Assembly (NCBI GenBank): GCA_002269645.1
Contig: NIVC01000640.1
Coordinates: forward strand, 62,001-126,000
DNA: 64,000 nucleotides
From: Macrostomum lignano
Taxonomy: Eukaryota
Reading direction: 5' to 3'
Made by a program: the position numbers and the translations under genes. Below the pieces are notes generated by a model. The model did not search any database, was not told where the DNA came from, and saw nothing but the letters and a program-made list of their open reading frames with translations. This document shows positions 17,219 to 64,000 of the stretch, one piece after another; the stretch's first letter is position 1; every line of letters begins with the position of its first letter.

Positions 17219-17819
17219 CCAGTGAACAAATGACAGGCATAGGGTATCTGGGAGGACTGATCGACAGACTAGCCACGGAATGACTGTACAATTACTGTTC
17301 TACCATTGTACTAATACTTTCAGTTTTAAAGAAAATAATTTCAGAACAGGTAAAAGCTTTACAGCTAGGAGGCTTTATTAGGAGCCGGGGCTGGCGGAAG
17401 CAGCAATCAGGACAAACATGTTGCAATAGTTTTAGTTAAAAATTCAACAGCTTCTTGTAACTTCGCTTGTAGGCGACGTTTAAGCAGAGAAATTTCGATG
17501 CAGGCGTTCCAGCTTCCCTAATTCTTGCCGCACAGCAATAGCGGAGAGATTAAAGCTGATTCCCTCCAAGCAATGCAGGAGCGCAAAGTCCCGGATTTGG
17601 GCGGCTTCCACCGTCGCCTCTGCATGCGGGACAAAAACTGTCAGACAGGAAACTGACAGACAGGCTCTGTTCCCCTTATCAATCTGCTGCCATCTGGCGG
17701 CCCCCGCCTGTTTTATTTAAATCAAAATTGCTGACTGCTTCACTGTGCTGACTCTATCTAGTGGAATGTGTCAGTTTGATGTCATCTTTTGTCATCAGTG
17801 TCTTTGACACCGCCTGTCA

Positions 17820-18450
17820 TGTCTTCTCTACCCTCTGCCATCACCTACCTTGCCTTCTCTACTCCTTCTGCTATCATCTACCCTGCCTTCTCTACCCCTC
17901 TGCCATCATCTACCCTACCTTATCTACCCCTTCTGCCATCATCTACCTTGACTTCTCTACCCCTCTGCCATCATCTACCTTGCCTTCTCTACTCATTCTG
18001 CTATCACCTACCCTGCCTTCTCTACCCCTTCTGCCATGATCTACCCTGCCTTCTCTACCCCTCTGTCATCATCTACCCTGCCTTCTCTACCCCTCCGCCT
18101 CCATCTACCCTGCCTTCTCTACCCCTCTGCCATCATCTACCCTGCCTTCTCTACCCCTCTGCCATCATCTACCCTGCCTTCTCTACCCCTCCGCCTCCAT
18201 CTACCCTGCCTTCTCTACCCCTCTGCCATCATCTACCCTGCCTTCTCTACCCCTCCGCCTCCATCTACCCTGCCTTCTCTACCCCTCTGCCATAATCTAT
18301 CTTGCCTTCTCTACCCTCCGCCTCCATCTACATTTTCTCTACCCCTCTAGCCATCAGCTACCCATACCTTCTCTACCCCTATAGCCATCAGCTACCCATA
18401 CCTTCTCTACCCCTATAGCCATCAGCTACCCATGCCTTCTCTACCTCTCC
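17820..18450. repeat. About 32-bp minisatellite (CTACCCTGCCTTCTCTACCCCTCTGCCATCAT)n
   Basis: Direct reading. Confidence 0.9.
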
Positions 18451-41800: not shown

Positions 41801-42812
41801 GAAAGGGCGGATTGACATCAGGCATCAAAGGAGGGAAAGGGCGGATTGACATCAGGCATCAAAGGAGGGAAAGGGCAGATTGACATCAGGCATCAAAGGA
41901 GGAAAAGGGCGGATTGACATCAGGCATCAAAGGAGGGAAAGGGCGGATTGACATCAGGCATCAAAGGAGGGAAAGGGCAGATTGACATCAGGCATCAAAG
42001 GAGGGAAAGGGCAGATTGACATCAGGCATCAAAGGAGGAAAAGGGCGGATTGACATCAGGCATCAAAGGAGGGAAAGGGCGGATTGACATCAGGCATCAA
42101 AGGAGGGAAAGGGCAGATTGACATCAGGCATCAAAGGAGGGAAAGGGCGGATTGACATCAGGCATCAAAGGAGGGAAAGGGCGGATTGACATCAGGCATC
42201 AAAGGAGGAAAAGGGCGGATTGACATCAGGCATCAAAGGAGAAAAAGGGCGGATTGACATCAGGCATCAAAGGAGGAAAGGGCGGATTGACATCAGGCAT
42301 CAAAGGAGGAAAGGGCGGATTGACATCGGACATTAAAGAAGGGAAAGTGCTTTCAAGCCTTAAAACCGAAGGGTCGAGGAATAAGAGTTAGACGTAAACC
42401 ATAGTACGACAAATAACTGAGCGGTTACCTTGGACACCATGACGCCTTCCTTTCCAGTCTGCTTAGTAACCAGCTTGTGCCCAAGCATGCTCTGAACCAG
42501 GCCAGCCACCTTAGCTGGCTCCTTAGTGAGATGGACACCGCCTTTGAATCCGGTGTCAAAGACGCCTTTGCCCCGGCCGCCGGCCAATATCTGAGCTTTA
42601 ATAACGTACTCGGCCGGTTTGAACGAGTCGGCCAATTTACTAGCTGACTGTGCATTGTCGGCAACTACAAAGCTTTGCACATTCACTCCGTAATCTTGCA
42701 TCAGCTTCTTGCTCTGATATTCTTGCAGGTTCAACCAGCGCCGGCAGCAGCGGAACAGACCGCTGGCAGAGGCCGCCGATTGTCGGCGAGATGAAAGGCT
42801 TCGAGTAAGCAT
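38813..42812 (-). CDS. SUCLG2: Succinate--CoA ligase [GDP-forming] beta subunit, mitochondrial; exons 42812-42429, 41481-41182, 40096-39752, 39043-38813 (419 aa)
   Basis: Mitochondrial-type leader then [67 protein letters not shown] and [14 protein letters not shown]. These match the GDP-specific paralogue. All introns are GT-AG, phase 0. Confidence 0.96.
39100..39690. repeat. 37/42-bp minisatellite in SUCLG2 intron 3 (GAGACACCTGTGCACAGCTACAGGTACACAGCAGCCT[ACACT])
   Basis: Direct reading. Confidence 0.93.
40160..40765. repeat. Degenerate about 23-bp minisatellite in SUCLG2 intron 2 (CAGTGTCAGCACCAGGGGAATCC)
   Basis: Direct reading. Confidence 0.85.
41625..42345. repeat. 34-bp minisatellite in SUCLG2 intron 1 (GGAGGGAAAGGGCGGATTGACATCAGGCATCAAA)n
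   Basis: About 21 near-identical units. Confidence 0.96.
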
Positions 42813-43614: not shown

Positions 43615-44613
43615 TCAGCCAATAGTCACGGAACCACTAAGCAAGTCTTTCACAAGCACCAAATTCAGGCCGGACAGAACGTGAACGCCAACCGGAAAAG
43701 TTACGCCGCTAGGAATCAGCCGGAGCTCCTGGCCAGCTGGCAGAGGCCTGGTTGGCGGCCAGACCGGCACCACATAAGTCCAATTAAGCAGCCAAACGAA
43801 GGCATTTTTAATAAAGTCGTCCAGAATCTGCTGGCCGGCGCCGCCGCGCAATGCCGGATATTTTGATGCCGGCGGCGGCTGAAGCACGTTCCGCAGACTG
43901 GACTGCGTCAGCTCGTTGCAATGTACAAGTTTCTGGCCGAGATGGCACACCGGCCGCAGATGGCAGCTCCGGATGTTCTCGAAGCTGCACTGGCACTGCC
44001 GTTTGCGGAATACTTTAGGGGCGCGAGGATTCAATCGGAAGCCGACAATTTTGTCGCTATAGTCGAATCGGACGCATTTGCCGCCCCAGCCAGACTGGGC
44101 AGTGACAGTGTCAAAGTTCACCAGGGAAGGGTTCTCCGAGGACCGGCTGGTGTCAATAAGCATGCCGCGACAGGCGGCCACCTCGGTCAGCTGGCTAGAT
44201 GAAAGGCGGGCGACGCCGCGGGCTATCTGATCAACGCATTCGGCCGACACTGGGAACGGCAAGCCGGGATCGGCGAGGCTCCGGCCAGCGGCGATTCGGT
44301 TGCTAAGCGCCGCAATGTACTCGATTTCGAATTTGTTACGCCAATGTACGCCTAGCAGGCCGAAATCTGAGACTAGAAATTTTAGCAGAGCTTTGAGCAC
44401 GTTGTGCCGGCCGCGGTGACGAGTGGCTCGAGCGTCCGACAGCTGCAACGGACGCTGCTGACGAGCTGGATGAGCCGAGGATGATGACAGGGGGGTAGGC
44501 CATTGTGACAGGCTGCGGCGGCAGCAGCAGGCGGTGACAGACCGCAGCGAGTTGAAGCTGATGCAACTGGGATACTGCTGAGGGATGGCAGACATTGTTC
44601 GATTATAATTCAA
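43615..44613 (-). CDS. Intronless hypothetical protein, 332 aa (or 326 aa from the second Met)
   Basis: 999-nt open frame in non-repetitive GC-rich DNA bounded by AT-rich flanks, with a minus-strand AATAAA at 43057-43062. No family recognised. Confidence 0.6.
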   Translation of the reverse strand: MNYNRTMSAIPQQYPSCISFNSLRSVTACCCRRSLSQWPTPLSSSSAHPARQQRPLQLSDARATRHRGRHNVLKALLKFLVSDFGLLGVHWRNKFEIEYIAALSNRIAAGRSLADPGLPFPVSAECVDQIARGVARLSSSQLTEVAACRGMLIDTSRSSENPSLVNFDTVTAQSGWGGKCVRFDYSDKIVGFRLNPRAPKVFRKRQCQCSFENIRSCHLRPVCHLGQKLVHCNELTQSSLRNVLQPPPASKYPALRGGAGQQILDDFIKNAFVWLLNWTYVVPVWPPTRPLPAGQELRLIPSGVTFPVGVHVLSGLNLVLVKDLLSGSVTIG

Positions 44614-46601: not shown

Positions 46602-49271
46602 GGTGCTGGTCATTTCGTCAACTGCTAGTTCGTCAACTGGGTTGACGAATTGACTAACATTTTAAGGTGGTCTCACTTGCAGTTGACGAAATGACCAAGG
46701 TTTTAGATTGGTTCATTAGTCAGTTGACGAAATGACCTGAGAATGTTAGTTACTTCGTCTACAGTTTGCAAATGTCATAACATGTACATCAACTAACGCA
46801 TGTCATATCCCCTTATTACCTTTGTTATTATCGGGTATTATTCCAGAAACTCCCAGATTTTCCGGAACGTTCTTTATTAATTTGTATACATATACAGCAA
46901 GCATGCCGCTACAAAGGCAAGATCGATCTTTCACGCTTTCCACCTTCTTCTTCGACTACTTCTGAATTCACCACAAAAAGAACCACCGATGAACCAACTG
47001 ACTTCTCTCAATCCATCTTCGCACCCACCCCCAAACTGACAACGTGCCCTGTCTAGCTGTAACTTGAACCAGGGCCCCTTGCGCTGACACCTGTTCTCTC
47101 AATCCATCTTCGCACCCACCCCCCAAACTGACAACGTGCCCTGTCTAGCTGTAACTTGAACCAGCGCCCCTTGCGTTGACACCTGTTCTCTCAATCTATC
47201 CTCGCACCCCCCCAAGCTGTCAATGTGCACCCTGTCTCTTTTACTTGAACCAGCGCCCCTCGCGTTGACACCTGTTCTCTCTCAATCCATCTTCGCACCC
47301 ACTCCCCCCCCCAAGCTGTCAATGTGCGCCCTAGCTCGTGCGCCCTATCTTGGTCTTGGTTTCAATCAAAACGTGGGTGTGGTGTCGGAGGGGAGGGGTA
47401 GGCAGGTAGGCAGTTCTTGTGAGGTGCGAATTGGCACCAGGTCTTATCCCCAACTATCATGTCTCAACAACCCCACCAGCCAAACCAATCCAAAATACTT
47501 TAAACCTGACACTGCAACCTCCTCAAACACTATATAATGGAGTAGGGTTTCAGGAGGGCCACTCAATTTTTACATCTTTGGATGGAGACTGATAAGTGTA
47601 TTCAGTGCTCAGAGACTGTGCGGCCACGTCAACAGGCCATACAGTGCGATTCATGCCAAAAGTGGCAACATCGAACTTGTGGGACTAGAATCTCACAAGC
47701 AGAGTACAGGCAGCTTATGCGGCAGGACGTGTTTGCATGGTCGTGTGCCACTTGTCAGGCAAGACCAGCGGTGGAGCCTGCGGCGGAGGCAGAAGACGCA
47801 GCAGGTCGATCTACTGGCCGAAATGTATGCTGCCGAAGCAGGTGAGAAATTCTATATTTAATAACATATGCTATAACATATCTTTTCTAATAAGACAGGC
47901 TAATTACAATAAAATAATTGACAACAATTTTAAATAAATATTATAGACATTATGGTTAGTACCCTGGGAACTGCTCTTAAAAAAATTAAAAAAGCACGTT
48001 TCTTCCTCACAGGGCCCTTCCAAGAGCCGGTCCGTCTCACTGAAGTCTCGATGGAAGGTCTGGAGCCTCAGGTGCTCCCAGAAATCGATGAGGCCAACGA
48101 TCTAGAGGAATTCGTCATTGTTCGCAATGGCACCAAGAAGCAAAAGCCGTCACTTATTCACCGCATTGGAGCTCGAGAATATGTATTGGGGCTGAACGTC
48201 GAAAAGAAAAACAGTCGCTATTGGCGCTGCACCCAACGCAATTCCAGGTTGAAGTGCCCGGCTTCTGCCATTGAAGACAGTCAGGGCAACGTTCGAAGCG
48301 GCCAAGCGGCTCACATCTGCGAACCACGAGTGCGTGAGGGAATGAAGCGCCGATTGGTCGCCGAGATCAAGGAGGACGCGAAGCGGCACTGCTTCAGATC
48401 GGCTGCAGCAATTGTGGAGGCGAAGTTGCTGGAGACCGGGCACATTGGCCCAATCAATCAGCTGGTGCGCATCGCCAATCGGTCTCGTGAGGTTGGGCGC
48501 CCGCAGCCTCCAGTCGACCTCCAGTTTGCACTGGCCTTGGATCATCTGCCTCCGAATTTTCTCCGCAGCGATGTCCGAGTCAAAGGCTCAGGTAAGCGTC
48601 ATCTGCTTCTTTACACATCCAACCAGATCGAGTTGCTTGTCTCCCGCAGATTGTGGTTTCTGGACGGCACCTTCGATGTCGTTCATGCCCCCTTCAAACA
48701 GCTGTACTCGGTGCACTGCTACATCCGACAGGGAACGACAATCAAGCAGGTTTCTCTGGCTTTCGCACTAATGTCAGGTAAGTCGGTAAATGACTACACT
48801 GCTGTCTTCTCTGCACTGAAACAGGGACTGGGCAACTCGACGCCGGAGGTCTGTGTCATGGACTTCGAAGCTGCGGCATGGCAGGCTTTACGGTCTGTGT
48901 TTCCGGCTGCAAGGTTCCAGGGCTCTCTACGGAGTCCACGAAGTCAGTGTGTACTGCCAGTCAATACGTACCAACAACGAGGTCGAGGGCTGGCACCGGA
49001 GACTCAAGCAGCGGGCCGAGAGAGTGCAGTTGACACTCTACCCACTCCTGCACCTGCTGCACATGGAGGCCAAGCTTGTGCCAGTGCATGCCGCGCTGGT
49101 GAACCAGGGTGCTCAGGAGCGCCAGCACAGAGCACGGTACGAGCGTCTGCAGACGAGTGTGGAGCGGTACTGGGCGCAGTACCGCACTGGTGAGTTGTCA
49201 ATCCGTGCATTCCTGCTCCGGTGCTCGCGCCTCGGCCACGTTCCCCAGTTTGCGTACAGACAGCGGCAACA

Positions 49272-49304
<33 letters not shown>

Positions 49305-49729
49305 CTAGTACCTAAAGTGTATATAGGTATTAGTGTATACAGTGTAGAAGTGGATAAGTGTACTGTACACTCTGCGCATATCTTCAGCTTTATATTTGAT
49401 TGTGACCTTTGTGGTGGCCTTTGTGATCTTTGTGATTTTGTGCAATGCATTTTCCTTTTTTTACCATACAAACTGCATCTTTGTGGCAGTAACTCCGCCA
49501 TTGTCTGGTCCCAAGCCCAGAATGAGAAAGGAGGAGGGCTGCATGCGGGGCGTGTATTATTGGCAGTTGACGAAGTGACCAAAAGTTGACATCGTCCCAT
49601 TGAACAGTTGACGAAATAACCAAGCTTTGAAAGTATCCTATTGGTTGGTTGACGAAACGACCAATATGGGGAACGGGTTGACGATGTGTCCAGTTGACGA
49701 AATGGCAGTTGACGAAATGACTCGGATCC
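46602..49729 (+). mobile_element. Mutator-like (MULE) DNA transposon, 3128 bp
   Basis: Both ends start GG and share GTCATTTCGTCAACTG; many subterminal GTTGACGAA motifs; 9-bp TSD GTTATTAGG at 46593-46601 and 49730-49738; internal transposase and four 91-bp repeats at 47005-47340. Confidence 0.95.
47582..49308 (+). pseudogene. PHD finger + FLYWCH + MULE (DDE) transposase, internally deleted and frameshifted
   Basis: Exon at 47582 is a C4HC3 PHD (CIQC...CDSCQKWQHRTC...WSCATC). The exon from 48013 has FLYWCH-like YWRCTQRNSRLKCPA...HIC, then LDGTF and MDFEAAAWQAL...FPAARFQG. The expected CxFH segment is absent and RTNNEVEGWH resumes in another frame, ending in poly-Q and TAG at 49308. Confidence 0.88.
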
Positions 49730-50675
49730 GTTATTAGGGCCTAATATTATATTGGGTTGAGTTGGACCATTATTTGGGACATGGACTTCAATCAAGTTAA
49801 GTATTCAAACAAAAATTCGATTGCCCCTTTACAGTCTGAGCGGTCATTAAACATGGTAAATATTGGATATGGCCGACTTGGCCGTATAATTTATACCCCA
49901 ATAGAAATTATTAAAATCCGCTTTACCCTTCAGGCGTTAGGGCCTAGCCCTAGGGAGCACGATCTTGAAGTTCAACTAGAGGCGGCGCGGCGCGGCCTAA
50001 CCGAAGAACCTTATTGATTCGAAGTGTGAAAGCAAGTTAGCAGACGCAAGTGCGACAATTTAAAAAAATTGGAACTGAAAACTTAAAAAACTTATTTTTG
50101 GTACGTTTCTTTTTGGTATGTTTTTTAAAATATAGTTTTATTTTAGACGTAAGTTTGCTATAATCGAAAAGGGTATATATACAAAATTCTTTTTTTCTAC
50201 GAAAAGTACCTCTGTCAACTTGGGGCTCTGCGGGTTTTAACAGCTTGTAATAACAATGTAAACGAATTTGTCAAAATCTATGGTAGGCCTAAGGACAAGG
50301 TAAACCGACTTCGTCAAAAGAGTTGACTCAGAGTCAAGAGAGTTCATTGACTTTTTTTCGTTCACATTCAAGATTCAATCAAGTTTACATGTTCAATTCA
50401 ACTATGCTTATAGTCAGATTGATATAAACTTTGCTTTTAAGTAAATATATAATATGTTAGGCAAATTTCTTGTCATTTTAAGTGCAAAGTGCCCACGAAG
50501 GCTTCATTTAAAAGTTCAGACATGCTTAAAAATGCGTAGCTGATATTTATGACTCAAAGACAAAACTCAAAAGAAGTCAATGACAATGTCATACATATTT
50601 GTAATGTATCTTTATATCTATTTTAAAAGTACTCATATTTTGTACTTATTTCACATTGTGCATTATTTGTATTTG

Positions 50676-51448
50676 GGCAATCCTGAAGATTCCCGCGTTT
50701 AATTATTTTACGGAATTTTACTAGCACATGCTGGTTGATCACTGGCAGCAGGGTGTTGGCTGAACAGTCTGGCACAGGAACAAGAACGCATTGACGAGTG
50801 CCTCTCTCCACCATGCCCAGCACCCAGTGGCCTTCACGGTACTGCCCCTGGTGGTACTTGCGATACATGAATTTGGACTCATCAATCTCAACATCCACTC
50901 CGGGCCCACCAAGCTGTGTTGGGTGGTCGATGAGGTACTGGGCACAGATGTCACAGATGTAATTGAACCAATCAATCACGGAGTATTCGCTGGCTCATGT
51001 CTCTTCAACCACAGTGGACAGGCAGCTGTTCGTTGACCAGAAGTAGATCATGTCGATCAACTGAACAAGTGACAGGTGACTGCCTTGGAAGAAAGAGCCA
51101 CACCGAATCGACTGATGTCGGCGGCAAGTCTTGCAGCTCCAGCAGACACCATCCACATAGTCTCGACCAGCCCGCCTTTGGAATGACATAGGCGTGTTGG
51201 GGCAGTGCTCACAGTCCATGCTGTTTTGCAGCAGCCCATACTTGGCCAGCCACTGGATGCCTGTCTCATCAGTTAGAGCCGTCAATTCACGATGGTTGAT
51301 GTTAAGTTCAGCTAGTTCAATAGTTGGTCTAACTTCTTAAGGATCCACGATTGTCTGGGGTGCTGGAGGTCACCCTGCCATAATTCCGTGGCTGAAATAT
51401 GCATAAAAATGCATAAAATAATTAAATGCGGGAATCTTCAGGATTGCC
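50676..51448 (-). mobile_element. Merlin / IS1595(ISXO2)-like DNA transposon deletion derivative, 773 bp
   Basis: About 35-bp TIRs GGCAATCCTGAAGATTCCCGC(G/A)TTTAATTATTTTA; 8-bp TSD TGTATTTG at 50668-50675 and 51449-51456. Transposase fragment has a CxxC...WxCxxC zinc ribbon, SIRCGSFF and GGPGVDVEIDESKF...WVLGMVER, with in-frame stops and truncation before the second catalytic Asp. Confidence 0.93.
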
Positions 51449-52904: not shown

Positions 52905-55130
52905 ATGAATTTTCTACGCAACCTTGGCAAAAAGTTATCCGAGGTGTCAGAAGACATCAATCAAAATCTGAGCCAACTCAAAGTGAAAGCTAGCGCCTCA
53001 TTTGACAGTTCGCTCAAACACAATGCTGATGACAAGTGAGTGAAGTTTTGCTTATTTTATTAGCTTGAATATCAGGCAGCACTGCTCATCCCTGATTGAG
53101 ATTTCTAATATTTCCCAGGCAAGATCCCCAGCATCTGCGCGCCCAATCCGCTGGCTGCCTGCTGCCTGGCGCTGACCTGCTGGCCGCCTACCAGCGCCAC
53201 TGGTCGGAGATTCACCGCGGCAGCGACGAAGTCGGCCGCTCCGTTGATCGAGTCGGCCGCCTGGCCGCCGTGGTGTCCGGCCGAGCGCGTTCCCGCGCCG
53301 CCGCCTGGACGGCCCTGCAGCGCGAGGCCTGCGACCTGCCGCGAACCCTGGCCAGTCTGGAGTGCATCGGAGCCCTGCTAGACAGCTTGGAGCAGAGCTG
53401 CCGCGAGGTTGAGCATGAACTGGCGCTGCTGGAGAATCAGGTAAGGTTGCAGTTACTCACTTACTGACGAGCGGCTCTACAGCATTGTAATTCAAAACAG
53501 AATCGTTCCAAATTATCACTTAAAAATCTATATCGGATCACCCGAATTGGCACCTTGTCACTAAAAATCACTCCAAAGATGTCACACATGAATCAGTCCT
53601 AACTTGTCCCTCAAGAATCGCCTCAAAACTTGTCACTCAAGAATCGCCTCAAAACTTGTCACTCAAGAATCGCCTTAAAACTTGTCACTCGAGAATCGCC
53701 TCAAAACTTGTCACTCAAGAATCACTCCAAACTTGTCACTCAAGAATCGCCTCAAAACTTGTCACTCGAGGATCGCCTCAAAACTTGTCACTCGAGGATC
53801 GCCTCAAAACTTGTCACTCGAGAATCGCCTCAAAACTTGTCACTCAAGAATCGCCCCAAAACTTGTCACTCAAGAATTGCCTCAAAACTTGTCACTCAAG
53901 AATCGCCTCAAAACTTGTCACTCAAGAATCACTCCAAACTTGTCACTCCAGAATCACTCCAAACTTGTCACTCGAGAATCACTTCAAACTTGTCACTCGA
54001 GAATCACTTCAAACTTGTCACTCCAAAGTTGTCATTGTCACTCAAGAATCACCGCACTTAATTATCCCAGAATCTGCCACTTGATAAAAATTATTATAAA
54101 CATTTGCATAAACATAAACGCATTACAAACATTGGAGTTCATGCATCAATCAATCAATTAGAATGAACACTTTGCCGTCATTCAGGCCGAGTGGGTGCAG
54201 CTGCGCCGGGACCAGCACGCTCACAACTACCAGCTGTTGGAGCACAGTAGGCGCCGATCAGAGGAGCTGGAACGGCGCCGGGTGCAGATGGCCCAGCGCC
54301 ACGCCGGCCGGGTCAGAGCGTTGGAACAGTCTCGACAGGCCGCCCTGTTGGAAAGGCAGCGCGCTTTTGAACAGGTGATAATAAATAATAATACTGTAAT
54401 AATTTATTACGCCTGCCCTAATGGAGCCACATGTGCAACCGACAGCTCAGCCGCAGCTATTGCACGGCGCATCTGAAGGCTGCGTACGGCTGTTCAGTCC
54501 AAGGACTGGGGGTTCGCCGCACACACACCCTAACTTTACAGCTGGGTGAACTGCAGCAATGCAGAGTTAAGTGTCTTGCTTAAGGACACAGATTGTTCCA
54601 AGTAGGATTGGGAATCGAACCCCCGACCTTTCCGTCGAGAGTTCTACTAGAATAAAACCCCTGGCTATAAGCTAAATATAATTAGGCTTAAGGCTTCACT
54701 TGGCATTCGTTCGCTGTGTCTTCACCGAACCCTTCTCCATCCAATTTCTCAGGAGTTCCAGCGGGACATGCAGTTCTTCAAGGAGCACGGCCACACTGAG
54801 CGGGCGCCGAGCGTCAGCAGCAGCGGCGGTGGCGGCGGAGGCGGAGCCGGCAGCGTCGGTAGCGGCGGCGGCGGTCAGGATACCCCGGCTTCTCTGGCCG
54901 ACGCCGCCGATCTGCTGCCGCCGCCGCCGCTGGACGACGCCGCCGAGGCGTTGGACAAATTTCTTGAAGCGAACGACGATGACGAAGATGTCGGCGAAGA
55001 TCCTGACGATGTTGACGCCGATGCGGCTGTCGAACTCGACGACGAAGAGGATGATGACGATGACGTCAGATCGCCGGTGTTTCCTGCCGCCGACGCCGAC
55101 GACTCATCTCAGGCAGCGCCTCAGGAGTGA
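52905..55130 (+). CDS. DTNBP1: Dysbindin (BLOC-1 subunit 8); exons 52905-53035, 53119-53440, 54186-54374, 54753-55130 (339 aa)
   Basis: Phase-consistent GT-AG introns (2,0,0). GADLLAAYQRHWSEIH, LPRTLASLECI and LLERQRAFEQ|EFQRDMQFFKEHG parallel the human dysbindin GLELLSRYEDTWAALH and [23 protein letters not shown]; acidic C-terminal tail. Confidence 0.88.
53605..54050. repeat. 25-26-bp minisatellite in dysbindin intron 2 (TCACTCAAGAATCGCCTCAAAACTTG)n
   Basis: Direct reading. Confidence 0.93.
54480..54650 (-). mobile_element. 5'-truncated tRNA-derived CORE-type SINE in dysbindin intron 3
   Basis: Minus strand has a B box GGTTCGATTCCC followed by GTGTCCTTAAGCAAGACACTTAAC, which resembles the CORE/MIR GTGACCTTGGGCAAGTCACTT, then CAGTTCACCCAGCTGTAAA. 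Confidence 0.7.
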
Positions 55131-55249: not shown

Positions 55250-55972
55250 CCCCAATTAGGAATCCTACAGTCCCAATTAGGAATCCTACAGTCCCAATTA
55301 GGAATCCTACAGCCCCAATTAGGAACCCTACAGTCTCAATTAGGAACCCTACAGTCCCAATTAGGAATGCTACAGTCCCAATTAGGAATCCTACAGTCCC
55401 AATTAGGAATCCTACAGTCCCAATTAGGAATCCTACAGTCCCAATTAGGAATCCTACAGTCCCAATTAGGAACCCTACAGTCCCAATTAGGAATGCTACA
55501 GTCCCAATTAGGAATCCTACAGTCCCAATTAGGAATGCTACAGTCCCAATTAGGAATCCTACAGTCCCAATTAGGAATGCTACAGTCCCAATTAGGAATC
55601 CTACAGTCCCAATTAGGAATCCTACAGTCCCAATTAGGAATCCTACAGTCCCAATTAGGAATCCTACAGTCCCAATTAGGAACCCTACAGTCCCAATTAG
55701 GAATCCTACAGTCCCAATTAGGAATCCTACAGTCCCAATTAGGAATCCTACAGTCCCAATTAGGAACCCTACAGTCCCAATTAGGAACCCTACAGTCCCA
55801 ATTAGGAACCCTACAGTCCCAATTAGGAATCCTACAGTCCCAATTAGGAACCCTACAGTCCCAATTAGGAATCCTACAGTCCCAATTAGGAATCCTACAG
55901 TCCCAATTAGGAATCCTACAGTCCCAATTAGGAATCCTACAGTCCCAATTAGGAACCCTACAGTCCCAATTA
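55250..55972. repeat. 21-bp minisatellite (CCCAATTAGGAATCCTACAGT)n downstream of the dysbindin stop
   Basis: About 34 units. Confidence 0.96.
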
Positions 55973-56475
55973 GCGTCTTCCATCAGTTTTTCAGATCTGT
56001 GTCAGTAAGAAGAATTTCTTACTCATTCTCAACATCAAATGAGACTGCGACCCAGTTGCTTTCGCATTCAATTGTTGCTAGGAACTTGATTTATTACAAT
56101 GCTGTGAATTGCATGGATTTCAGCCGCACAGAGTACAGTAATATTTAATTCTACTTCAGTATTTCAAATGTACATACTTGTTTTGCGTTGCGGTCATTTA
56201 CAATCCGAGACAATAAAAATTATGTTTAATCATATTTCTTTATTGCCAAATAAATTCCAAAATAAGATGATTACATTATCAAACATTCTCCATTGATTGA
56301 CAGCTAAGTTAAGCAAACTGGAATTTAAATGCATTGCGGTCTTTTAATCGACATCTGGACTTGGAAGAAAAATTTTGCTGATGCACCTACTGTAAGTATT
56401 GCAATGATCATTGTTAGTAACAAGGCATAACAAGTTAAAGTTGTGATTTTACACTGACGGTCCATCCTCTTCAAG

Positions 56476-56745
56476 GGCTGCCGTAACCCAGTGGTCTAGC
56501 GCGGCGCTCTGATGTGCCAGCGGCCCAGGCTCGATATCAAGTGCCGTCACATTGCTTTGGAGCTAAATTGGAATATCGGCTTGGAAGGGCCAAACCCCAA
56601 GGCACGGTGAAGTGTACATGCCTAACGATATATAAAGTCAGGACCGCTGTACACTCCTGTGAGTGTGTGCCTGTGTGTATGACTGCGTACGTATCCACGC
56701 GCTTGTGTGCCTGCTCAGGGGAGTCGGCGGAATGGGCAGAAATGG
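56476..56745 (+). mobile_element. tRNA-head SINE-like element; partial copies at 57150-57260, 57728-57870 and head only at 44768-44795
   Basis: A-box-like CAGTGGTCTAGCG and B-box-like GGCTCGATATC. The body CCCCAAGGCAC(G/A)GTGAAGTGTACATGCCTAACGAT...CTCAGGGGAGTCGGC is repeated at 57730, and a 26-nt head is identical at 44768. Confidence 0.6.
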
Positions 56746-57885
56746 CTTAAAGTGCGCAATGGTTTAAACACAGCCCCTGCCTCTACGAGCGAAATAGGAA
56801 TTCTCTTCTATTGGTTATAATAATAAATCCCTTATAGCATGTAAAATTCAATTAGTGTACTTCTTATACTACTTATTCTTATTCTGTCAATAGTAGCCTA
56901 CTGAGAATATCTACTATATACCAGTTAATTAACTAGTGTAACTAGTCAACTTGAGCACTGGAATACAGCCCGAAGTTCGAGCGCTGCTCCGAGTCGAACC
57001 GGCTGCAAAGGGTCAGAGCAGCTCACTGGCAGACGCGGCTGACTCTCGCGCTTCACGATCCTTGATTCGATTCTGCGCGCCGACATACTCACTTTTATGG
57101 CTTGTGGGCGAAAACTGGCCAATGGGTTGCCGTGCGATTCACAGCCACGAGGGCCAACCCACCCCAAGGCGCAGAGAGTGCACATGCCTGACGATTGGAA
57201 AGTCATGGCCGCTGTGCACCCTTTGTGAGCGCGTGTGTATGATTGTGCGTATTGACGATCAGATCAGCCAGTGTCCTTACATCTGCTGTTAATTTACTCG
57301 TAGAATTTATTTTTCAAATGGCGCAATGCTTTGATGTGTTTGGTGAATTCAATACGTGTTAAATAAAGTGAACACTTTCTGTAATGATTGCTTGTGTTTG
57401 ATGTTCGCTGCAACGGGCACTGGGATGATAAGGGGGATAATATTGTATAGCCGTGCGAGCTGCATGCAGTCTCTCGGTCTAACTGGGTTACAGGATCTGG
57501 TAGCGCAGCTGCTCGACTGCTAATTTTCGATTATTATTCCAAGAAAGAAAATGCAATAAAATTGCTGCGATGCTAAACATTCGCGAAGGGTGCGCTTATG
57601 AATATTTAATTTTTTTCATTTCAATATTTACATTTTCCGTATTCATTAGAGGCAGTGTATTATAGTTTGAGCTAGAATGCTACTACGAGTAGTAGGGACA
57701 TTTTGGAATCTCGGCGCCCTTGAAGGTCAACCCCCAAGGCACAGTGAAGTGTACATGCCTAACGATTAATAAAGTTAATCGCTGTACACTCCTGTGTGAG
57801 TGTGTGCCTGTGCGTATAACTGCGTACGTATCCGCGCGCTTGTATGCCTGCTCAGGGGAGTCGGCTCTAACTGGATTCCACTGAA

Positions 57886-58412
57886 ATCTAGATTGCTGTG
57901 TCATATTATTGCAATTGATTTCTGCACAGTCTAGATTGCTGTGTCATATTATTGCAATTGATTGCTGCGCAGTCTAGATTGCTGTGTCATATTATTGCAA
58001 TTGATTGCTGCGCAGTCTAGATTGCTGTGTCATATTATTGCAATTGATTGCTGCGCAGTCTAGATTGCTGTGTCATATTATTGCAATTGATTGCTGCGCA
58101 GTCTAGATTGCTGTGTCATATTATTGCAATTGATTGCTGCGCAGTCTAGATTGCTGTGTCATATTATTGCAATTGATTGCTGCGCAGTCTAGATTGCTGT
58201 GTCATATTATTGCAATTGATTGCTGCGCAGTCTAGATTGCTGTGTCATATTATTGCAATTGATTGCTGCGCAGTCTAGATTGCTGTGTCATATTATTGCA
58301 ATTGATTGCTGCGCAGTCTAGATTGCTGTGTCATATTATTGCAATTGATTTCTGCGCAGTCTAGATTGCTGTGTCATATTATTGCAATTGATTGCTGCGC
58401 AGTCTAGATTGC
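57886..58412. repeat. 43-bp minisatellite (TCTAGATTGCTGTGTCATATTATTGCAATTGATTGCTGCGCAG)n
   Basis: About 12 nearly identical units, no spacers. Confidence 0.96.
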
Positions 58413-58878
58413 TGCAGAGTTTCCATCACGGGGGGCGGCGGGAAAGAGCAGCGGCCAGCCAACATGTACACCAGCTGTGTGGTAAACTGAGAGAAACGAG
58501 GAGATTCGCAGCAGTCATCCGAGCCAGTGCACACAGACAGGCCCCATGGAGTGCCTGACTGCCTGGCAACTGTGCCAGTCTGCAGCACTATGATGCCTCC
58601 CGGCAGCGGCAAACAAATATTTGAGTCGCCACGCCTATTCTGGGCACTGCTGTAGCCGCACCCATGTACAAACACACACACACACACAATAAGCACTGCT
58701 ACGAGAGAAAGGAAAGCTTCATTAATTTTAAATCGCGCTGGTCTGCAGTGGATGGTCCTGAGTGCCTCATTTTTTCTCCAGCTCTATATATATTATATAT
58801 ATAAAATCTGCTGCACTTGCCACAAGATGGAGACTTGGCTGCTTTACAAGCAGCCCTGAGAACCCATTGCGGCATTTC

Positions 58879-59017
<139 letters not shown>

Positions 59018-60189
59018 CTCTAACACCGCGGCCAACAATTATGGCCACCCCCTGTTGTCGGTAATTTGTCAATCTTTGGTTAGCGGCAAGAAAACAGAGA
59101 CCCAATGTAATTTGGCAGAAGTTTTTTTTACAGCTTTACAAGAAAGTACGCTCGTAATCAACTGGCTAAGGTATGCGAAATAGCTAGCTTTAATTAGATT
59201 GCTAACACCCTTTAAGGTGTAACACGCCACCTTCGCCAAAATATTCTTCAAGCTATCATTAATAATAACTGCAGCCATTCAGCAATTGCTCAGACTTGAA
59301 ATTGCTTTCTCTTGCCTTTCTCTGTGTTTGCTAAAAATAAGCAACACCTGGATGAGACTTGAAACATTATTTGGCTATAGAAGCGCGCGGTTGAGCAGCT
59401 GGAAACCATGCAGAATGCTTCATCTGGCGCGTGCAGCGATGCTGACAGGCCAGAGGGGCAGACAAAGCTTTAGAGATGCACACAGAGCATTTGGGAGTTG
59501 GGAAATTGTCTCGCTCTTATGCGTCACACGCAGAAATAGGTGCCTAGCTTTCCATTAGTGCATGCAAATTTCAACCGACTGGATCCCTGTTGATGTAACT
59601 GGAAGTTAACTCACTTTGGGATTGACTATAGTTTGAAGTGGATCTGTTTCAAAAAAGGTTCGATTTTATTCACTCTAGTACCTATACGCGCTAGCCGTGG
59701 CCAGTCCTACTGTCTCAAGCATTTCAACTCACGATTGGACGAGTCGCGTTGCACGCAATACCGTGACTGCGACAGCAAGTGAACCGCGTCTGCCATGGCG
59801 AAGGTGAAACCTGCAGCTTCCATCATCGTTTAGCTGGAAACTGGCAGGCAGTCAGTCTAGCCAGAGCCATCAGTGCCAATTCCGCTATCTTTCTCGGTCA
59901 ATATTTATCACTTTAGGCAAAAGCATTTCAACAGCTGAACAGTGGAAAGCAAAAACTTGTTTACACTTCGCTTGGTGACGCCCTGAAGCGGTGCAGCGTC
60001 TGGTTGGAGAGCTCCGATTTAACAGTTTGAAGTCACAAAACTGTGAAAGAAAGAAACGCGCTTTCAAACTAAAATCTATCAATCAATTAGTGAGTTGTGA
60101 GCCTCTTAAACTGTGAAGATATGAAGAGAGAAACTGAGTCCAGTGATCCTGGGAGCAATATTTCTTTGACACGCAAATTAAATCAGGTG

Positions 60190-60600
60190 CTTCTGAGGTA
60201 CTTTTTAGCGGAGAAGCACCTGAGGTACATTTTTAGCGGAGAAGCACCTGAGGTACAGCTGTAGCTGAGAAGCACCTGAGGTACATCTGTAGCGGAGAAG
60301 CACCTGAGGTACATCTGTAGCGGAGAAGCACCTGAGGTACATCTGTAGCGGAGAAGCACCTGAGGTACATCTGTAGTGGAGAAGCACCTGAGGTACATCT
60401 GTAGCGGAGAAGCACCTGAGGTACATCTGTAGCGGAGAAGCACCTGAGGTACATCTGTAGCGGAGAAGCACCTGAGGTACATCTGTAGCGGAGAAGCACC
60501 TGAGGTACATCTGTAGCGGAGAAGCACCTGAGGTACATCTGTAGCGGAGAAGCACCTGAGGTACATCTGTAGCGGAGAAGCACCTGAGGTACATCTGTAC
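60190..60600. repeat. 28-bp minisatellite (AGCACCTGAGGTACATCTGTAGCGGAGA)n
   Basis: About 14 units. Confidence 0.95.
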
Positions 60601-62127
60601 CGAAGAAGCCTCGCTTTATCACCCTATAACTTGGACGCGATAAAATAATACGGTATACTCGTATTTGCATCAGGTGCAGCAGAGTCCCAAACTGCAGGGT
60701 TAGCTGCACCGGCTGCAGTATTGACCAAAAATCCCTCAACTTTTATAAGGGAAACGGGGACACAGTGAGGATATTGTAAAAAGGTGTAATCGTCGAGAGT
60801 GAGAGTTAATGCTGCTGCTGAGTCGATTTCTGCTCCAATTCCCAAACCCATGCGGTCCCCTCCCTTGTGGGACAGTCGATAAAGCGGAGTTCTTCCCCTG
60901 TCTGTCTCCCTGCTCCCACCGTGGGAGGTGCACTGCTGAGTCCGTGTAGCATTCAGGGGGGGGGGGAATTGTATCTGTCATTGGGCGCCAAGTAGTGTGT
61001 GAATAAAACTGCGCCACGCAGTGAGAAATTTGAGCCTCCGATACGCTTGCATTCCCTACGCCTTAAATACAGTGTCTATAATGCCGCTGTGCCGGCCTTA
61101 AAAACTTTCAATTCCAGTACCTGGGGCGGCCAACTCTCTGCAAACCTATGTCTGCGATCCCTTCCCTCTGTCTTCCCCTTCGCATGGATCAAATAGCCCG
61201 CATCTGTTATCAGAATGAAGCACGCCAGGGCTGAAACACTCCGAAAGTGGAATTGGAAGATCTTAACTGACACACCTTGTTAAGTGGGGTGTTTAGGGTG
61301 CTCAAGCAATTGTTGAGGAGTTGATATTATCGAGATTAAAGAATAGTGGGCAGCGGAAGTGGCTAGGGGAGGATTGGGATCGATAAAAGGTGCAGAAAGG
61401 AGAGTGAGTTGTTGATAAGCGAGACAATCTCCCATAAGATGGCCAAAAAGAGGCACAGAAAGTCGGAAAGGATTTAAAATCATTTTCCAGAGCATAAAAT
61501 ATTTCAGAATCACTTAGGGACCCGCTGCATCAAAGTGCATTGGAGTGGGAAATGGTGCAATGGGGCAGCTGGCTTACTCCAAATTTGGCAGGCAAATGTG
61601 TTGTAAAGTGGGGACAGTGTGCGTCAGTAAGCAGACTGTGCAGGGCCTCAGGGACCCCCAGAGGTAGTTGCATAATTGATAGCGGTTAGTGCTTTACAAA
61701 GCTTGTATGGCCGGCAATGAACAGTAGATATACTTCACTCTTCTAATGCCCATCCCCCCTCTCTCTCAGCGTTTTCGCACGCGCAGGTGAGGTTGTACGC
61801 TCGTATACAAGTGTGGGAGCAGATGCCCAGCTGTTGGTCAGGCCATCTCCAGCCAGTCAGTCATTTTAGTCTTCAAAATTGATGATTGAGGGCCGGGAGC
61901 GGGCACGCCAAACTGATAAACAAAATGAGGACTGTGGAGAGGGGATTTGAGGCGGTCGGCCCAGCTCTGCGCCCTCCGATGCCAGCCAATGGGAATCAGT
62001 GGCCGGGCAGCTAGCAGTTGTCGGATCAGTCAAATTTCTATAAAAATGCGCTCCCGTCAACCTCTAAGCGACAGTCTGGCGGCTTTGCGGCTATGGGAAC
62101 TTAGACTGCAGGCCTCGGCTCTGAGAG

Positions 62128-64000
62128 ATGCACTGTGCGAGGGCCTCCGCACTGCTGCTGCTTCTGGCCGCTGCTCTGCTCTGCGGGAGGATCAGCGGCC
62201 TGGACGACTGCCGGCGGCTCTGTCCGGCCGCCTGTCCGGTCTGCAGCTTCCGCTACGCATTCGCCCAGCACCATCTGGAGCTCGACTGCGCTTTTGCTGC
62301 CGACGCTGGCGCCCTGACACCTCTGACGAACTGCCTGGCTGGCGGCGACCTCAATGTGCTGATCATCCGCCGGGTGCGCTCGGCTGTCCGGCTGCTCAGC
62401 AAGCTGTCCGGCCTGCCGCGCCTCATCTACCTCAACTTGAGCCGCAACGACGTCACAGGCCTGCCAGCCGGCGCCTTCGCCGGATTCGCCGAGCTGCGCG
62501 ACCTCGTCCTCGACGCCAACAGAATCGACAGCCTCGCCGACGGGTCGCTGGCGGCGCCTCGGCTGCGCCGGCTCAGCTTGGCGCGCAACCGGCTGGCCAA
62601 CATCTCGGCGGCGGCGTTTGGCAGCGCCGCCAATCAGCTGACGCGGATTGACCTCAGCCACAACCTGCTGGACGAGCTGACGGACTGGCCTCTGCTGCTG
62701 GCTGAGCGGGCCGGACACCGGCCGGGCGTCAGGCGGAGCCTGCGGCTGCTGCTCGACCACAACCGGGTGCGCCAGTTCACGGCTGAGCGGCGGTGGCCGG
62801 CCTATATGCTGGGCCGTCTGGCGGATGCTGGGCTCAACATCAGCCTGGTTGGCAACGGCATCCGCCACCTCGGCGTCCTGCTCAGCGGCTGGCACCTGCT
62901 CGACAATCAGCCGCCGGCTCGGGCAGAAAACTGGCGACCGCTGATCAGCAGCCTGGCCGGAAATCCCCTGCACTGCGACTGCGAAGACTTCCGGCTTCTC
63001 TATCCCGACGGCGGGCGCACCTCCCCGCTGGCCGCACTGCTGGAAAGCTCAGCCGCGCTGCCCGAATGCGCCGAGCCCGCCGAGTTGCGCGGCCGTCGTC
63101 CACTGGTTGGCGCCAAGTTCCGGCCCGGCCTGGCGCCCGCGGAGCTCGTCTGCCAGCGCCAGCCCTGCCTTGACTCGGCCGCCGGGCGCTGCCGCTGCAC
63201 CGAAGAGCCGTGGCGCCGGGCGCTGTCGGTTGACTGTCGCGGAGTGACGCTGGACCGACTGCCGCACTGGCGGGAGCTGCCGCCCCTCCCGGCTAGCGGC
63301 GGCTACGCCTACCGGTTCAACTTCAGCGGCGGCCGACTGGCCAACCGCGGCCTGCCCGGCATGCCGAAGGTCTTCCGCGAGGCCGTCAGTCTCGACCTGA
63401 GCGGCACCGGACTCGAGGATCTGCCGGCCCGCTACCTGGCCAAGCTGCAGAGCCTGGAAGAGCTCATGCTGCATCACAATCTGCTCACCCGGCTTGACCC
63501 GGAACTAGCCAGGACGTCTTTTCCTCGGCTTCGCCGGCTCCGCCTGGACAGAAACCCCTGGCACTGCGGCTGCAACTCCAGCTGGCTGCCCGGCTGGCTG
63601 CGCGCCCTGCGCCACACGCTACTGGCGCCTGACGATGTGCGCTGCGCCGAGCCGCCGCGCCTGCGCGACCGATCGCTGCTGTCGCTGAGCTCCGCCGTCC
63701 TGTGCGACCTACCGGAGCCGCGGCCGGCAAACCGGGGCTACGACCGGCTGGCCCTCAGCTCGTCCGCCATCAGCGCCGCCCTGGCCCTGGCTACCATGGC
63801 CCTCTTGGCCGCCTTCTGCGGCCGGGTCAGCCTGTTCGCCAGCTGCGGCCTGCACCCCTTCGACAGGGACGAGTGCGCCGGCGAAGCCAAATCCTGCGAC
63901 GCGTTTATCATGTTCCACCCGGACGATGCGGACTGGGTAGCCGCCGTGCTAGTAGAGAAGCTGCGCCGCCGGCCGCGGCCCTACGCCCTGTGCACCCACG
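62128..64000 (+). CDS. Toll-like receptor, multiple-cysteine-cluster (protostome Toll) type, intronless so far, 3'-partial
   Basis: Hand translation gives 624 codons with no stop: signal peptide MHCARASALLLLLAAALLCG, LRRs (LIYLNLSRNDV, LRDLVLDANRI, LRRLSLARNRL, LTRIDLSHNLL), LRRCT NPLHCDC at 62962, LRRNT CQRQPC...CRC...VDC, further LRRs, second LRRCT NPWHCGC at 63553, TM helix at about 63751-63840, HPFDRDEC and TIR box 1 DAFIMF at 63898. Confidence 0.94.
   Translation, partial: MHCARASALLLLLAAALLCGRISGLDDCRRLCPAACPVCSFRYAFAQHHLELDCAFAADAGALTPLTNCLAGGDLNVLIIRRVRSAVRLLSKLSGLPRLIYLNLSRNDVTGLPAGAFAGFAELRDLVLDANRIDSLADGSLAAPRLRRLSLARNRLANISAAAFGSAANQLTRIDLSHNLLDELTDWPLLLAERAGHRPGVRRSLRLLLDHNRVRQFTAERRWPAYMLGRLADAGLNISLVGNGIRHLGVLLSGWHLLDNQPPARAENWRPLISSLAGNPLHCDCEDFRLLYPDGGRTSPLAALLESSAALPECAEPAELRGRRPLVGAKFRPGLAPAELVCQRQPCLDSAAGRCRCTEEPWRRALSVDCRGVTLDRLPHWRELPPLPASGGYAYRFNFSGGRLANRGLPGMPKVFREAVSLDLSGTGLEDLPARYLAKLQSLEELMLHHNLLTRLDPELARTSFPRLRRLRLDRNPWHCGCNSSWLPGWLRALRHTLLAPDDVRCAEPPRLRDRSLLSLSSAVLCDLPEPRPANRGYDRLALSSSAISAALALATMALLAAFCGRVSLFASCGLHPFDRDECAGEAKSCDAFIMFHPDDADWVAAVLVEKLRRRPRPYALCTH

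What the first reader, a model, noticed from the sequence alone, without database searches (positions are those of the whole stretch)
62128..64000. Full-architecture Toll receptor (LRR-TM-TIR) missed by the ORF track, in what looks like a flatworm genome
Seen: one uninterrupted frame carries a signal peptide, LRRs, an internal LRRCT/LRRNT cysteine cluster, more LRRs, a second LRRCT, a TM helix and the start of a TIR domain. The N-terminal LRR block is short (about 6 repeats, versus about 15 in Drosophila Toll). Established: this two-cluster layout is the mccTLR type. As I recall, comparative surveys report canonical TLRs as absent from Platyhelminthes, with LRR and TIR domains on separate proteins. 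Inference: the satellite-stuffed introns and GC-rich exons resemble Macrostomum lignano. If so, TLR loss happened within flatworms rather than at their base.
Basis: partly seen in the sequence, partly recalled or inferred. Interest (0 to 1): 0.8.

Follow-up and report, generated by a model that had tools for sequence, protein, structure and literature searches.

The report
Unannotated Toll-like receptor gene in Macrostomum
The flatworm Macrostomum lignano, reported in published surveys to have no Toll-like receptors, carries an intact but unannotated single-exon gene for a complete one (leucine-rich repeats, membrane helix, TIR domain), so the loss of this immune receptor family probably happened inside the flatworms and not at their origin.

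Summary
The window is 100% identical to Macrostomum lignano contig NIVC01000640.1 of assembly GCA_002269645.1. The frame that opens at 62128 continues 758 bases past the window end as one 876-codon exon. It encodes a signal peptide, LRRNT, about 8 LRRs, LRRCT, LRRNT, about 4 LRRs, LRRCT, a TM helix, a complete TIR with boxes 1-3, and a 140-aa tail.

Pfam TIR passes its gathering cut-off. The TIR matches solved TLR2/TLR15 and MyD88 TIRs. The protein aligns colinearly, aa 5-778, with Arenicola marina "TLR13". It shares a juxtamembrane HPFDRDEC motif with annelid short multiple-cysteine-cluster TLRs.

A second copy on another contig, about 98% identical with the same neighbour gene, keeps the frame open for all 558 visible codons (dN/dS 0.24). 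This rules out a contaminant or a chimeric join.

No gene is annotated at either locus, and no near-identical protein exists among 5.8 billion database proteins. Three papers state that flatworms lack TLRs, and one names M. lignano explicitly.

Expression and signalling are untested. This is a new member of a well-known receptor family in an unexpected phylum, not a new kind of system.

The parts
62039..62046 (+). TATAAAAA box 82 bp upstream of the ATG; candidate core promoter
   Evidence: Read directly from the sequence. It is identical in the second genomic copy, and the 260 bp upstream differ at only 4 positions. Function is not tested.
62128..64000 (+). First 624 codons of the 876-codon single-exon TLR coding sequence; the stop codon lies 758 bases beyond the window end (L003:19233-21863 = NIVC01000640.1:124128-126758)
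   Evidence: Translation. Extension on L003. GC by codon position is 0.71/0.55/0.84.
62128..62199 (+). Signal peptide, aa 1-24 (MHCARASALLLLLAAALLCGRISG)
   Evidence: Hydropathy peak of 1.98 at aa 7-25. No dedicated signal-peptide predictor was available.
62209..62289 (+). N-terminal cysteine cap (LRRNT), C28, C32, C36, C39, C54
   Evidence: Cys positions. Aligns with the CPxxC...C cap of Arenicola TLR13.
62350..62967 (+). First LRR block, about 8 repeats (aa 75-280)
   Evidence: Pfam LRR_8/LRR_4/LRR_1. LxxLxLxxN segments. AF2 pLDDT above 90 for aa 100-180.
62968..63153 (+). Internal LRRCT (GNPLHCDCEDF...C314...C342)
   Evidence: Motif and Cys spacing. Aligns to the LRRCT of the Paralvinella and Arenicola TLRs. 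Not called by Pfam.
63166..63237 (+). Internal LRRNT (C347, C355, C357, C370)
   Evidence: Cys pattern. Aligns to CPxGCRC...C of the annelid TLRs.
63307..63561 (+). Second LRR block, about 4 repeats (aa 394-478)
   Evidence: Pfam LRR_8 stretches. pLDDT 84-94.
63562..63705 (+). Membrane-proximal LRRCT (NPWHCGCNSSW...C506...C526)
   Evidence: Pfam LRRCT scores 21.9 bits against a cut-off of 20 on the window fragment and 19.2 bits on the full protein.
63748..63837 (+). Transmembrane helix (aa 541-570)
   Evidence: Highest hydropathy in the protein, 2.07 at aa 547-565. AF2 helix at 544-564.
63850..63906 (+). Juxtamembrane signature LHPFDRDECAGEAKSCDAF
   Evidence: Shared with 70 of the 150 best library hits, including the three named annelid TLRs. 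Absent from the vertebrate, nematode and cnidarian TLRs examined.
63895..63999 (+). Start of the TIR domain (box 1 DAFIMF, helix A, start of box 2 LCTH); the domain continues to aa 735 beyond the window
   Evidence: Pfam TIR PF01582 scores 24.5 bits against a cut-off of 21.3 on the full protein. PDB TLR15/TLR2 TIR E 3.5e-8, MyD88 3e-5, and IL-1RAcP aligned over aa 26-143 of the 149-aa domain. Boxes 1-3 are aligned.

Best explanation
This is a genuine, intact gene of Macrostomum lignano that encodes a canonical type-I Toll-like receptor of the multiple-cysteine-cluster (P-type) kind. Both public annotations of the species missed it.

Shown:
- The complete LRR-TM-TIR architecture lies in one exon.
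- The gene sits in the host genome in two duplicated copies.
- Sequence change between the copies follows the pattern of purifying selection.
- The protein is related to spiralian short mcc TLRs.

Inferred from the family:
- The two-lobed LRR ectodomain binds a ligand, either a microbial pattern directly or a processed Spaetzle-like cytokine as in Drosophila Toll.
- Ligand-driven dimerisation brings the two TIR domains together.
- The BB loop (LCTHDRTRLPG, with the Pro-Gly kept) and box 3 (FW) recruit a TIR adaptor such as MyD88.
- The signal then passes to the TRAF6/TAK1/p38 and NF-kB modules that are documented in other free-living flatworms.
- An immune role and a developmental role are equally open.
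For: - Species and locus: (100% identity to NIVC01000640.1).
- Full ORF of 876 aa ending in a stop.
- Domains.
- TIR similarity to solved TLR and MyD88 TIRs, with boxes 1-3 present.
- Colinear end-to-end alignment with annelid TLRs: E 1e-55 and 4e-53.
- Search of 1.84 billion representatives: 259 hits at E<=1e-10, with LRR-TM-TIR proteins at the top.
- Named relatives from Paralvinella, Arenicola, Helobdella and Dendronephthya.
- Shared juxtamembrane motif.
- Predicted ectodomain best matches the Drosophila Toll and C. elegans TOL-1 ectodomains.
- Second copy with the same synteny and an open frame over 558 codons. It has 8 synonymous and 5 non-synonymous differences and no indel. dN/dS is 0.24, binomial p 0.011.
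- The 1.9 kb upstream of that copy has 2.5% mismatches plus 16 gapped bases.
- GC3 of 0.85 resembles the neighbouring host gene.
- A conserved TATA box and an in-frame stop lie just upstream of the ATG.
Against: - No gene model exists at either locus in the transcript-derived GenBank annotation.
- No near-identical protein appeared among 5.8 billion sequences, which include UniProt M. lignano entries and Logan assemblies of public sequencing runs. There is therefore no sign of expression so far.
- The GenBank set did discard transcripts that overlap repeats, so this absence is weak evidence.
- The TIR is divergent. Pfam TIR is only 3 bits above its cut-off and matches just profile positions 11-82. 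TIR_2 is below its cut-off.
- The selection test rests on 13 substitutions and covers only the first 558 codons, so it does not reach the TIR.
- The 140-aa tail has weak codon periodicity.
- Presence of MyD88 and other pathway parts in M. lignano was not checked.
Confidence: 0.72

Rival explanations
1. The ORF is a silent relic. It would be a TLR gene that is no longer transcribed and has not yet had time to accumulate disabling mutations. Both copies would look intact only because the duplication is recent.
For: No annotated transcript at either copy and no matching protein from any source. The copies differ by only 0.8% in the ORF, so 13 substitutions give limited power. The TIR is weakly scoring.
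Against: The protein differs from every relative by about 70-75%, yet it keeps all cysteine caps, the TM helix, the juxtamembrane motif and TIR boxes 1-3. That pattern needs long-term constraint in the Macrostomum lineage. Between the copies there are no indels in 1674 bp, against 16 gapped bases in the adjacent 1.9 kb, and non-synonymous changes are depleted. GC3 is 0.85.
Confidence: 0.2
2. The segment is not flatworm DNA. It would be a contaminant, a chimeric join in the assembly, or a recent horizontal acquisition from an annelid or mollusc.
For: The nearest named relatives are annelid TLRs. The ORF is far more GC-rich (70%) than the surrounding DNA (about 46-49%).
Against: Two independent long contigs (498 kb and 358 kb) carry the same order: SUCLG2, the neighbour gene, then the TLR. 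Host exons are equally GC-rich, with the neighbour CDS at GC3 0.73. Identity to the closest relatives is only 25-32%, which does not fit a recent transfer or contamination. The same host satellites flank the gene on both contigs.
Confidence: 0.02
3. The gene is real and expressed, but it acts as a developmental or neuronal adhesion/guidance receptor, as several insect Tolls and C. elegans TOL-1 do. On this reading flatworms would still lack TLR-based pathogen sensing.
For: The structural and sequence neighbours include Drosophila Toll and TOL-1. PMC8609888 reports developmental expression of protostome TLRs. The gene is single-copy apart from the genome duplication, with no expansion visible in this locus.
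Against: Nothing in the sequence discriminates between the two roles. The closest family (annelid and mollusc-like short mcc TLRs) is usually discussed as immune, which is my own knowledge and not tested here.
Confidence: 0.3

Closest known systems
Short multiple-cysteine-cluster TLRs of annelids (Arenicola marina 'Toll-like receptor 13' UCK81512.1, Paralvinella palmiformis KAK2163172.1, Helobdella robusta XP_009010198.1) and unnamed marine-invertebrate relatives
   Same: - The order of parts is the same: SP, LRRNT, about 8 LRRs, LRRCT, LRRNT, about 4 LRRs, LRRCT, TM, TIR.
- The alignment is colinear over aa 5-778.
- Both carry the juxtamembrane H-P-F-D-x-D-E-C-x-G-E motif.
- Size is similar, 650-770 aa before the tail.
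   Different: - Identity is only 25-32%.
- The composition is extremely Ala/Arg/Leu/Pro-rich because the coding DNA is 70% GC.
- The TIR scores lower against these proteins (20-26 bits) than against Toll-like proteins of about 1000 aa.
- There is an extra 140-aa low-complexity C-terminal tail.
Drosophila Toll / insect Toll family and C. elegans TOL-1 (P-type TLRs)
   Same: Both have a two-block ectodomain with an internal LRRCT-LRRNT junction. These are the best Foldseek matches (4lxr, 8suf). The Aedes Toll5A ectodomain is the second-best PDB sequence hit. TIR boxes 1-3 are present.
   Different: The ectodomain is about 515 aa, against about 800 in Toll, with far fewer N-terminal LRRs. The HPFDRDEC motif is absent from the Toll-like hits of about 1000 aa. 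TM-scores are low, about 0.2.
Vertebrate TLRs (single-cysteine-cluster type), e.g. TLR2/TLR15, TLR3, TLR13
   Same: LRR-TM-TIR topology. The TIR is most similar among solved structures to TLR15/TLR2 (E 3.5e-8).
   Different: Vertebrate TLRs have one LRRCT only and 19-27 LRRs in a single horseshoe. Here there are two cysteine-capped blocks.
Flatworm 'TLR-like' proteins (TIR-only and LRR-only proteins of Schmidtea mediterranea)
   Same: Same phylum, and the same domain types.
   Different: In planarians no protein joins LRR and TIR (PMC7958881). Here both are on one polypeptide with a TM helix between them.

Membership tests
Toll-like receptor (definition used in PMC8609888: TIR + TM + at least one LRR) | At least one extracellular leucine-rich repeat | tested here: met
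   Pfam LRR_8 E 7e-25, LRR_4 E 3e-18, and LRR_1 at 28.5 bits against a cut-off of 20.6.
Toll-like receptor | Single transmembrane segment between the LRR region and the TIR, with an N-terminal signal peptide (type I topology) | tested here: met
   There are only two hydrophobic peaks, at aa 1-25 and aa 542-570. AF2 places a helix at 544-564. No SignalP or TMHMM was available, so topology is inferred from hydropathy.
Toll-like receptor | Cytoplasmic TIR domain | tested here: met
   PF01582 scores 24.5 bits against a gathering cut-off of 21.3, a partial match to profile positions 11-82. phmmer against PDB TIRs: TLR15/2 3.5e-8, MyD88 3e-5, and IL-1RAcP over nearly the whole domain. Box 1 DAFIMF, box 2 LCTHDRTRLPG and box 3 GFW are aligned.
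Toll-like receptor | Ligand-dependent signalling through a TIR adaptor | not testable with these tools
   Needs expression, interaction and reporter assays.
Multiple-cysteine-cluster (P-type) TLR | Two or more LRRCT modules, usually with an internal LRRNT | tested here: met
   The membrane-proximal LRRCT is called by Pfam (21.9 bits against a cut-off of 20 on the fragment; 19.2 bits on the full protein). The internal LRRCT and LRRNT are identified by Cys pattern and by alignment to the same modules of annelid TLRs, not by Pfam.
Spiralian short mcc TLR group (working name; not a curated family) | Juxtamembrane H-P-F-D-x-D-E-C-x-G-E motif followed by box 1, and an overall length of 650-770 aa | tested here: met
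   LHPFDRDECAGEAKSCDAF at aa 575-593. The motif occurs in 70 of the 150 best hits, including Paralvinella, Arenicola and Helobdella. It is absent from the vertebrate, nematode and cnidarian TLRs and from the Toll-like proteins of about 1000 aa.
TLR clade alpha / beta / gamma of PMC8609888 | Position in a maximum-likelihood tree of LRR-TM-TIR | not tested
   No tree was built, because no ML program or reference data set was at hand. The ectodomain points to annelid short mcc TLRs. The TIR alone scores best with cnidarian and Toll-like proteins. The clade is left open.

The most novel reading that the evidence does not exclude
This is the first canonical TLR of the phylum Platyhelminthes, and it is functional. 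TLRs were therefore still present in the last common ancestor of Rhabditophora and were lost later, within the flatworms, after Macrostomorpha branched off. That overturns the published inference of an early, phylum-wide loss. It also gives a genetically tractable flatworm, with transgenesis and RNAi, in which Toll signalling, stem cells and regeneration can be studied together.
Probability: 0.6. Interest if true: 0.65.

Novelty: new member of a known kind. Interest (0 to 1): 0.6.

Why it matters
Two comparative surveys and one review treat flatworms as the textbook case of a phylum that lost TLRs. One survey uses M. lignano itself, as an early-branching lineage, to place the loss at the base of the phylum (PMC8609888). 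Another links the loss to parasitism (PMC10279657).

An intact LRR-TM-TIR gene in the free-living M. lignano changes both inferences:
- The loss would be later and lineage-specific.
- The earlier result becomes an artefact of searching predicted proteomes only.

It also cautions that 'absence' calls in repeat-rich, GC-heterogeneous genomes depend on annotation.

M. lignano has transgenesis and RNAi. The role of a TLR in a regenerating animal with pluripotent stem cells therefore becomes directly testable.

Tried and rejected
1. The first translation, from 62129, was out of frame. It was corrected to 62128.

2. A word-indexed search with the TLR fragment gave only weak hits to GC-rich bird and turtle TLRs and LRR proteins, driven by composition. 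This was useful only as proof that the protein is not in the databases.

I reached the contigs instead through the annotated proteins P0024, P0144 and P0145.

4. The first contig reached, NIVC01001827.1, turned out to be the other copy. It stopped at codon 559 because its satellites are longer.

5. The representative search and structure prediction refuse sequence beyond the window. The TIR could therefore not be folded or used as a library query. I used aa 275-624 and aa 1-624 instead.

6. The two best hits with the TIR alone (P0154 and P0217, 79 bits) looked like close relatives. They are gene models that fuse two tandem Toll genes, so the score is doubled.

7. The sigma-70 promoter and terminator scan is irrelevant for a eukaryote and found nothing.

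8. Pfam gave no family for the 'dysbindin' neighbour or for the 319-aa gene next to SUCLG2.

9. Foldseek TM-scores are low, about 0.2, because the model is a multi-domain chain of moderate confidence. Only the ranking was used.

10. The third SUCLG2 copy (P0147, on a 148-kb contig) was not followed. The TLR would lie beyond the 10-kb flank limit.
Full report
**What is in the window.** From the ATG at 62128 the plus strand stays open to the last base of the window, 624 codons. An in-frame TGA lies two codons upstream of the ATG. The mechanical ORF list omits this frame only because it runs off the end. The stretch is 67-72% GC, against 45-50% for most of the window. GC by codon position is 0.71/0.55/0.84, the signature of coding sequence in a GC3-rich genome.

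**Domains in the window part.** Pfam finds LRR_8 (E 4e-24), LRR_4, LRR_1 and an LRRCT at aa 504-522. Reading the protein directly gives the following:
- A hydrophobic signal peptide at aa 1-24.
- A cysteine cap, C28-C54.
- About eight LRRs.
- The LRRCT pattern GNPLHCDC...C314...C342.
- Immediately after it, an LRRNT pattern: C347, C355, C357, C370.
- About four more LRRs.
- A second LRRCT: NPWHCGC...C506...C526.
- The strongest hydrophobic segment of the protein, aa 542-570.
- The motif CDAFIMFHPDDADW...LCTH, which is the start of a TIR domain.

The only correction is that the N-terminal block has about eight repeats, not six.

**Which organism.** Four exons on the minus strand (about 42.8 kb to 38.8 kb) encode a GDP-forming succinate-CoA ligase beta subunit. 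It is 100% identical to Macrostomum lignano BOX15_Mlig015029g2, and the next best hits are molluscs at 73%. Through annotated neighbours I fetched the genomic contigs. Locus L003, from NIVC01000640.1 (498,525 bp; assembly GCA_002269645.1, Mlig_3_7), is 100% identical to window 42896-64000 and extends 1,130 bases further.

**Completing the gene.**
- On L003 the frame continues to a stop codon. The ORF is L003:19233-21863, or NIVC01000640.1:124128-126758, 876 codons with no interruption.
- On the full protein Pfam TIR (PF01582) scores 24.5 bits against a gathering cut-off of 21.3. The match is partial. TIR_2 is below its cut-off.
- Against PDB sequences the cytoplasmic domain matches the TIRs of TLR15/TLR2 (E 3.5e-8) and MyD88 (3e-5). 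It aligns with IL-1RAcP over residues 26-143 of its 149 residues.
- A MAFFT alignment with bird, turtle, lamprey and nematode TLRs shows box 1 (DAFIMF), box 2 with the BB-loop Pro-Gly (LCTHDRTRLPG) and box 3 (GFWRELF).
- A 140-aa low-complexity tail follows. Its codon periodicity is weaker, so its coding status is less certain.
- GC drops to 0.54 right after the stop.
- A TATAAAAA box lies 82 bp upstream of the ATG.

**Is it really part of the flatworm genome?** A second contig, NIVC01001827.1 (358,641 bp), carries the same order: SUCLG2, a 303/304-aa gene, then the ORF. Identity is about 96-98%, with different satellite lengths and without a 3.1-kb transposon present in the window.

This fits the known duplicated chromosomes of the sequenced DV1 line, which has 180 Mb of blocks at least 95% identical (PMC5730564). 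Two independent long contigs with the same arrangement rule out a contaminant or a chimeric join. Identity of only 25-32% to the nearest relatives rules out a recent transfer.

**Constraint.**
- The second copy is visible for 558 codons and is open throughout.
- It differs at 13 positions, 8 synonymous and 5 non-synonymous, with no indel.
- dS is 0.0175, dN is 0.0041 and dN/dS is 0.24. The deficit of non-synonymous changes has a binomial p of 0.011.
- The adjacent 1.9 kb of non-coding DNA has 2.5% mismatches and 16 gapped bases.
- The 260 bp upstream, including the TATA box, differ at only four positions.
- The numbers are small and do not cover the TIR.
- Long-term constraint is also implied by the retention of every cysteine cap, the TM helix and the TIR boxes in a protein that has diverged by about 70% from all relatives.

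**Relatives.**
- The word-indexed search of 5.8 billion proteins found nothing close. The best hit had 35% identity over 17% of the query, and none came from M. lignano. That database holds both the GenBank and the UniProt M. lignano proteins, so neither annotation contains this gene.
- An exhaustive phmmer search of 1.84 billion representatives with aa 275-624 gave 2,148 hits at E<=1e-3 and 259 at E<=1e-10. The best was E 9e-47 at 31% identity.
- The top hits are 530-890-aa LRR-TM-TIR proteins.
- Those that carry names are from Paralvinella palmiformis, Arenicola marina ('Toll-like receptor 13'), Helobdella robusta and the octocoral Dendronephthya gigantea ('protein toll-like').
- The full protein aligns colinearly with Arenicola TLR13 from aa 5 to aa 778 (E 4e-53) and with the Paralvinella protein (E 1e-55).
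- A juxtamembrane signature, H-P-F-D-R-D-E-C-x-G-E followed by box 1, is shared by the flatworm protein and 70 of the 150 best hits, including the three annelids. It is absent from the vertebrate, nematode and cnidarian TLRs and from the Toll-like proteins of about 1000 aa that I examined.
- The TIR on its own scores best against the Toll-like and cnidarian proteins of about 1000 aa (42-48 bits). Two apparent outliers at 79 bits are gene models that fuse two Tolls. I leave the assignment to clade alpha, beta or gamma open.
- An AlphaFold model of aa 1-624 has mean pLDDT 71. The LRR blocks are above 90 and a TM helix lies at 544-564.
- The model's best PDB matches are the Drosophila Toll ectodomain, the C. 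elegans TOL-1 ectodomain and TLR7/8/9. TM-scores are low.

**What the literature says.**
- PMC8609888 (Orus-Alcalde et al. 2021) lists M. lignano with 0 TLRs. It argues that this early-branching species reinforces a loss 'during early platyhelminth evolution'.
- Its method was hmmsearch of a TIR profile against predicted proteins, using the 2015 genome for this species. An unannotated gene is invisible to that method.
- PMC10279657 (Saco et al. [quoted passage not shown]
- PMC7958881 and PMC6043800 say that flatworms have only TIR-only and LRR-only proteins.
- Five further full-text searches found no report of a Macrostomum or other flatworm TLR.
- Subscription-only papers are not in the library, so priority cannot be excluded.

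**Why the gene was missed.** The GenBank annotation of Mlig_3_7 consists of transcript-derived 'core genes', from which transcripts that overlap repeat annotations were removed. No gene is called in the 10 kb downstream of the neighbour gene on either contig. Either the gene is expressed at a level too low to be assembled, or its transcript was filtered out. The tools here hold no RNA-seq data, so expression is the main open point.

**Verdict.** The best explanation is a live, unannotated P-type TLR of M. lignano (confidence about 0.7). The main rival is a silent relic (about 0.2). An artefact is very unlikely.

The receptor itself is ordinary and belongs to a well-known family. The interest lies in where it occurs. 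It contradicts an explicit published absence, moves the inferred TLR loss from the base of the flatworms to a point within them, and is easy to test in a tractable model.

Noticed in passing
window 47934-49190 (+), within the 46602-49730 segment: A 419-aa ORF with MULE transposase (E 1e-8) and FLYWCH zinc-finger matches. The roughly 3.1-kb segment around it is absent from the homeologous contig NIVC01001827.1, so this is a transposon insertion polymorphic between the duplicated copies.
   Followed up: partly
window 50626-51336 (-): Two adjacent open stretches. The first has a weak ISXO2-like (IS1595-type DDE) transposase match (20 bits, below the cut-off). It is probably a decayed transposon between SUCLG2 and the next gene.
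   Followed up: partly
My GT-AG model gives 339 aa, while the GenBank models give 304 aa (BOX15_Mlig033275g1) and 303 aa. Pfam finds no family for it. Its introns hold a 26-bp satellite (53601-54023) and a tRNA-like/SINE-like stretch near 54480-54650 that ARAGORN does not call.
   Followed up: partly
window 38816-42800 (-): A GDP-forming succinate-CoA ligase beta subunit in only four exons. Three near-identical copies are annotated in the assembly, on contigs of 498, 358 and 148 kb. This suggests the region is present three times in the DV1 line.
   Followed up: partly
window 43615-44574 (-) (= L003:720-1679): An annotated 319-aa single-exon gene with no Pfam match, conserved on both contigs. 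Its function is unknown.
   Followed up: no
window 1-18000 and 55251-60609: Very dense tandem satellites. Examples are the 21-bp unit at 55251-55973, the 43-bp unit at 57887-58414, the 28-bp unit at 60193-60609 and a (CT)66 run at 58881-59012. Many long arrays in the first 18 kb create spurious ORFs of 300-540 aa in several frames. Array lengths differ between the two homeologous contigs.
   Followed up: partly
L004 (GCA_013357705.1 JABGOM010000345.1:54832-64698) and protein P0217: Two database gene models of about 2,100 aa are fusions of two tandem Toll-type receptors. Such merged models double the domain scores and can mislead rankings.
   Followed up: partly
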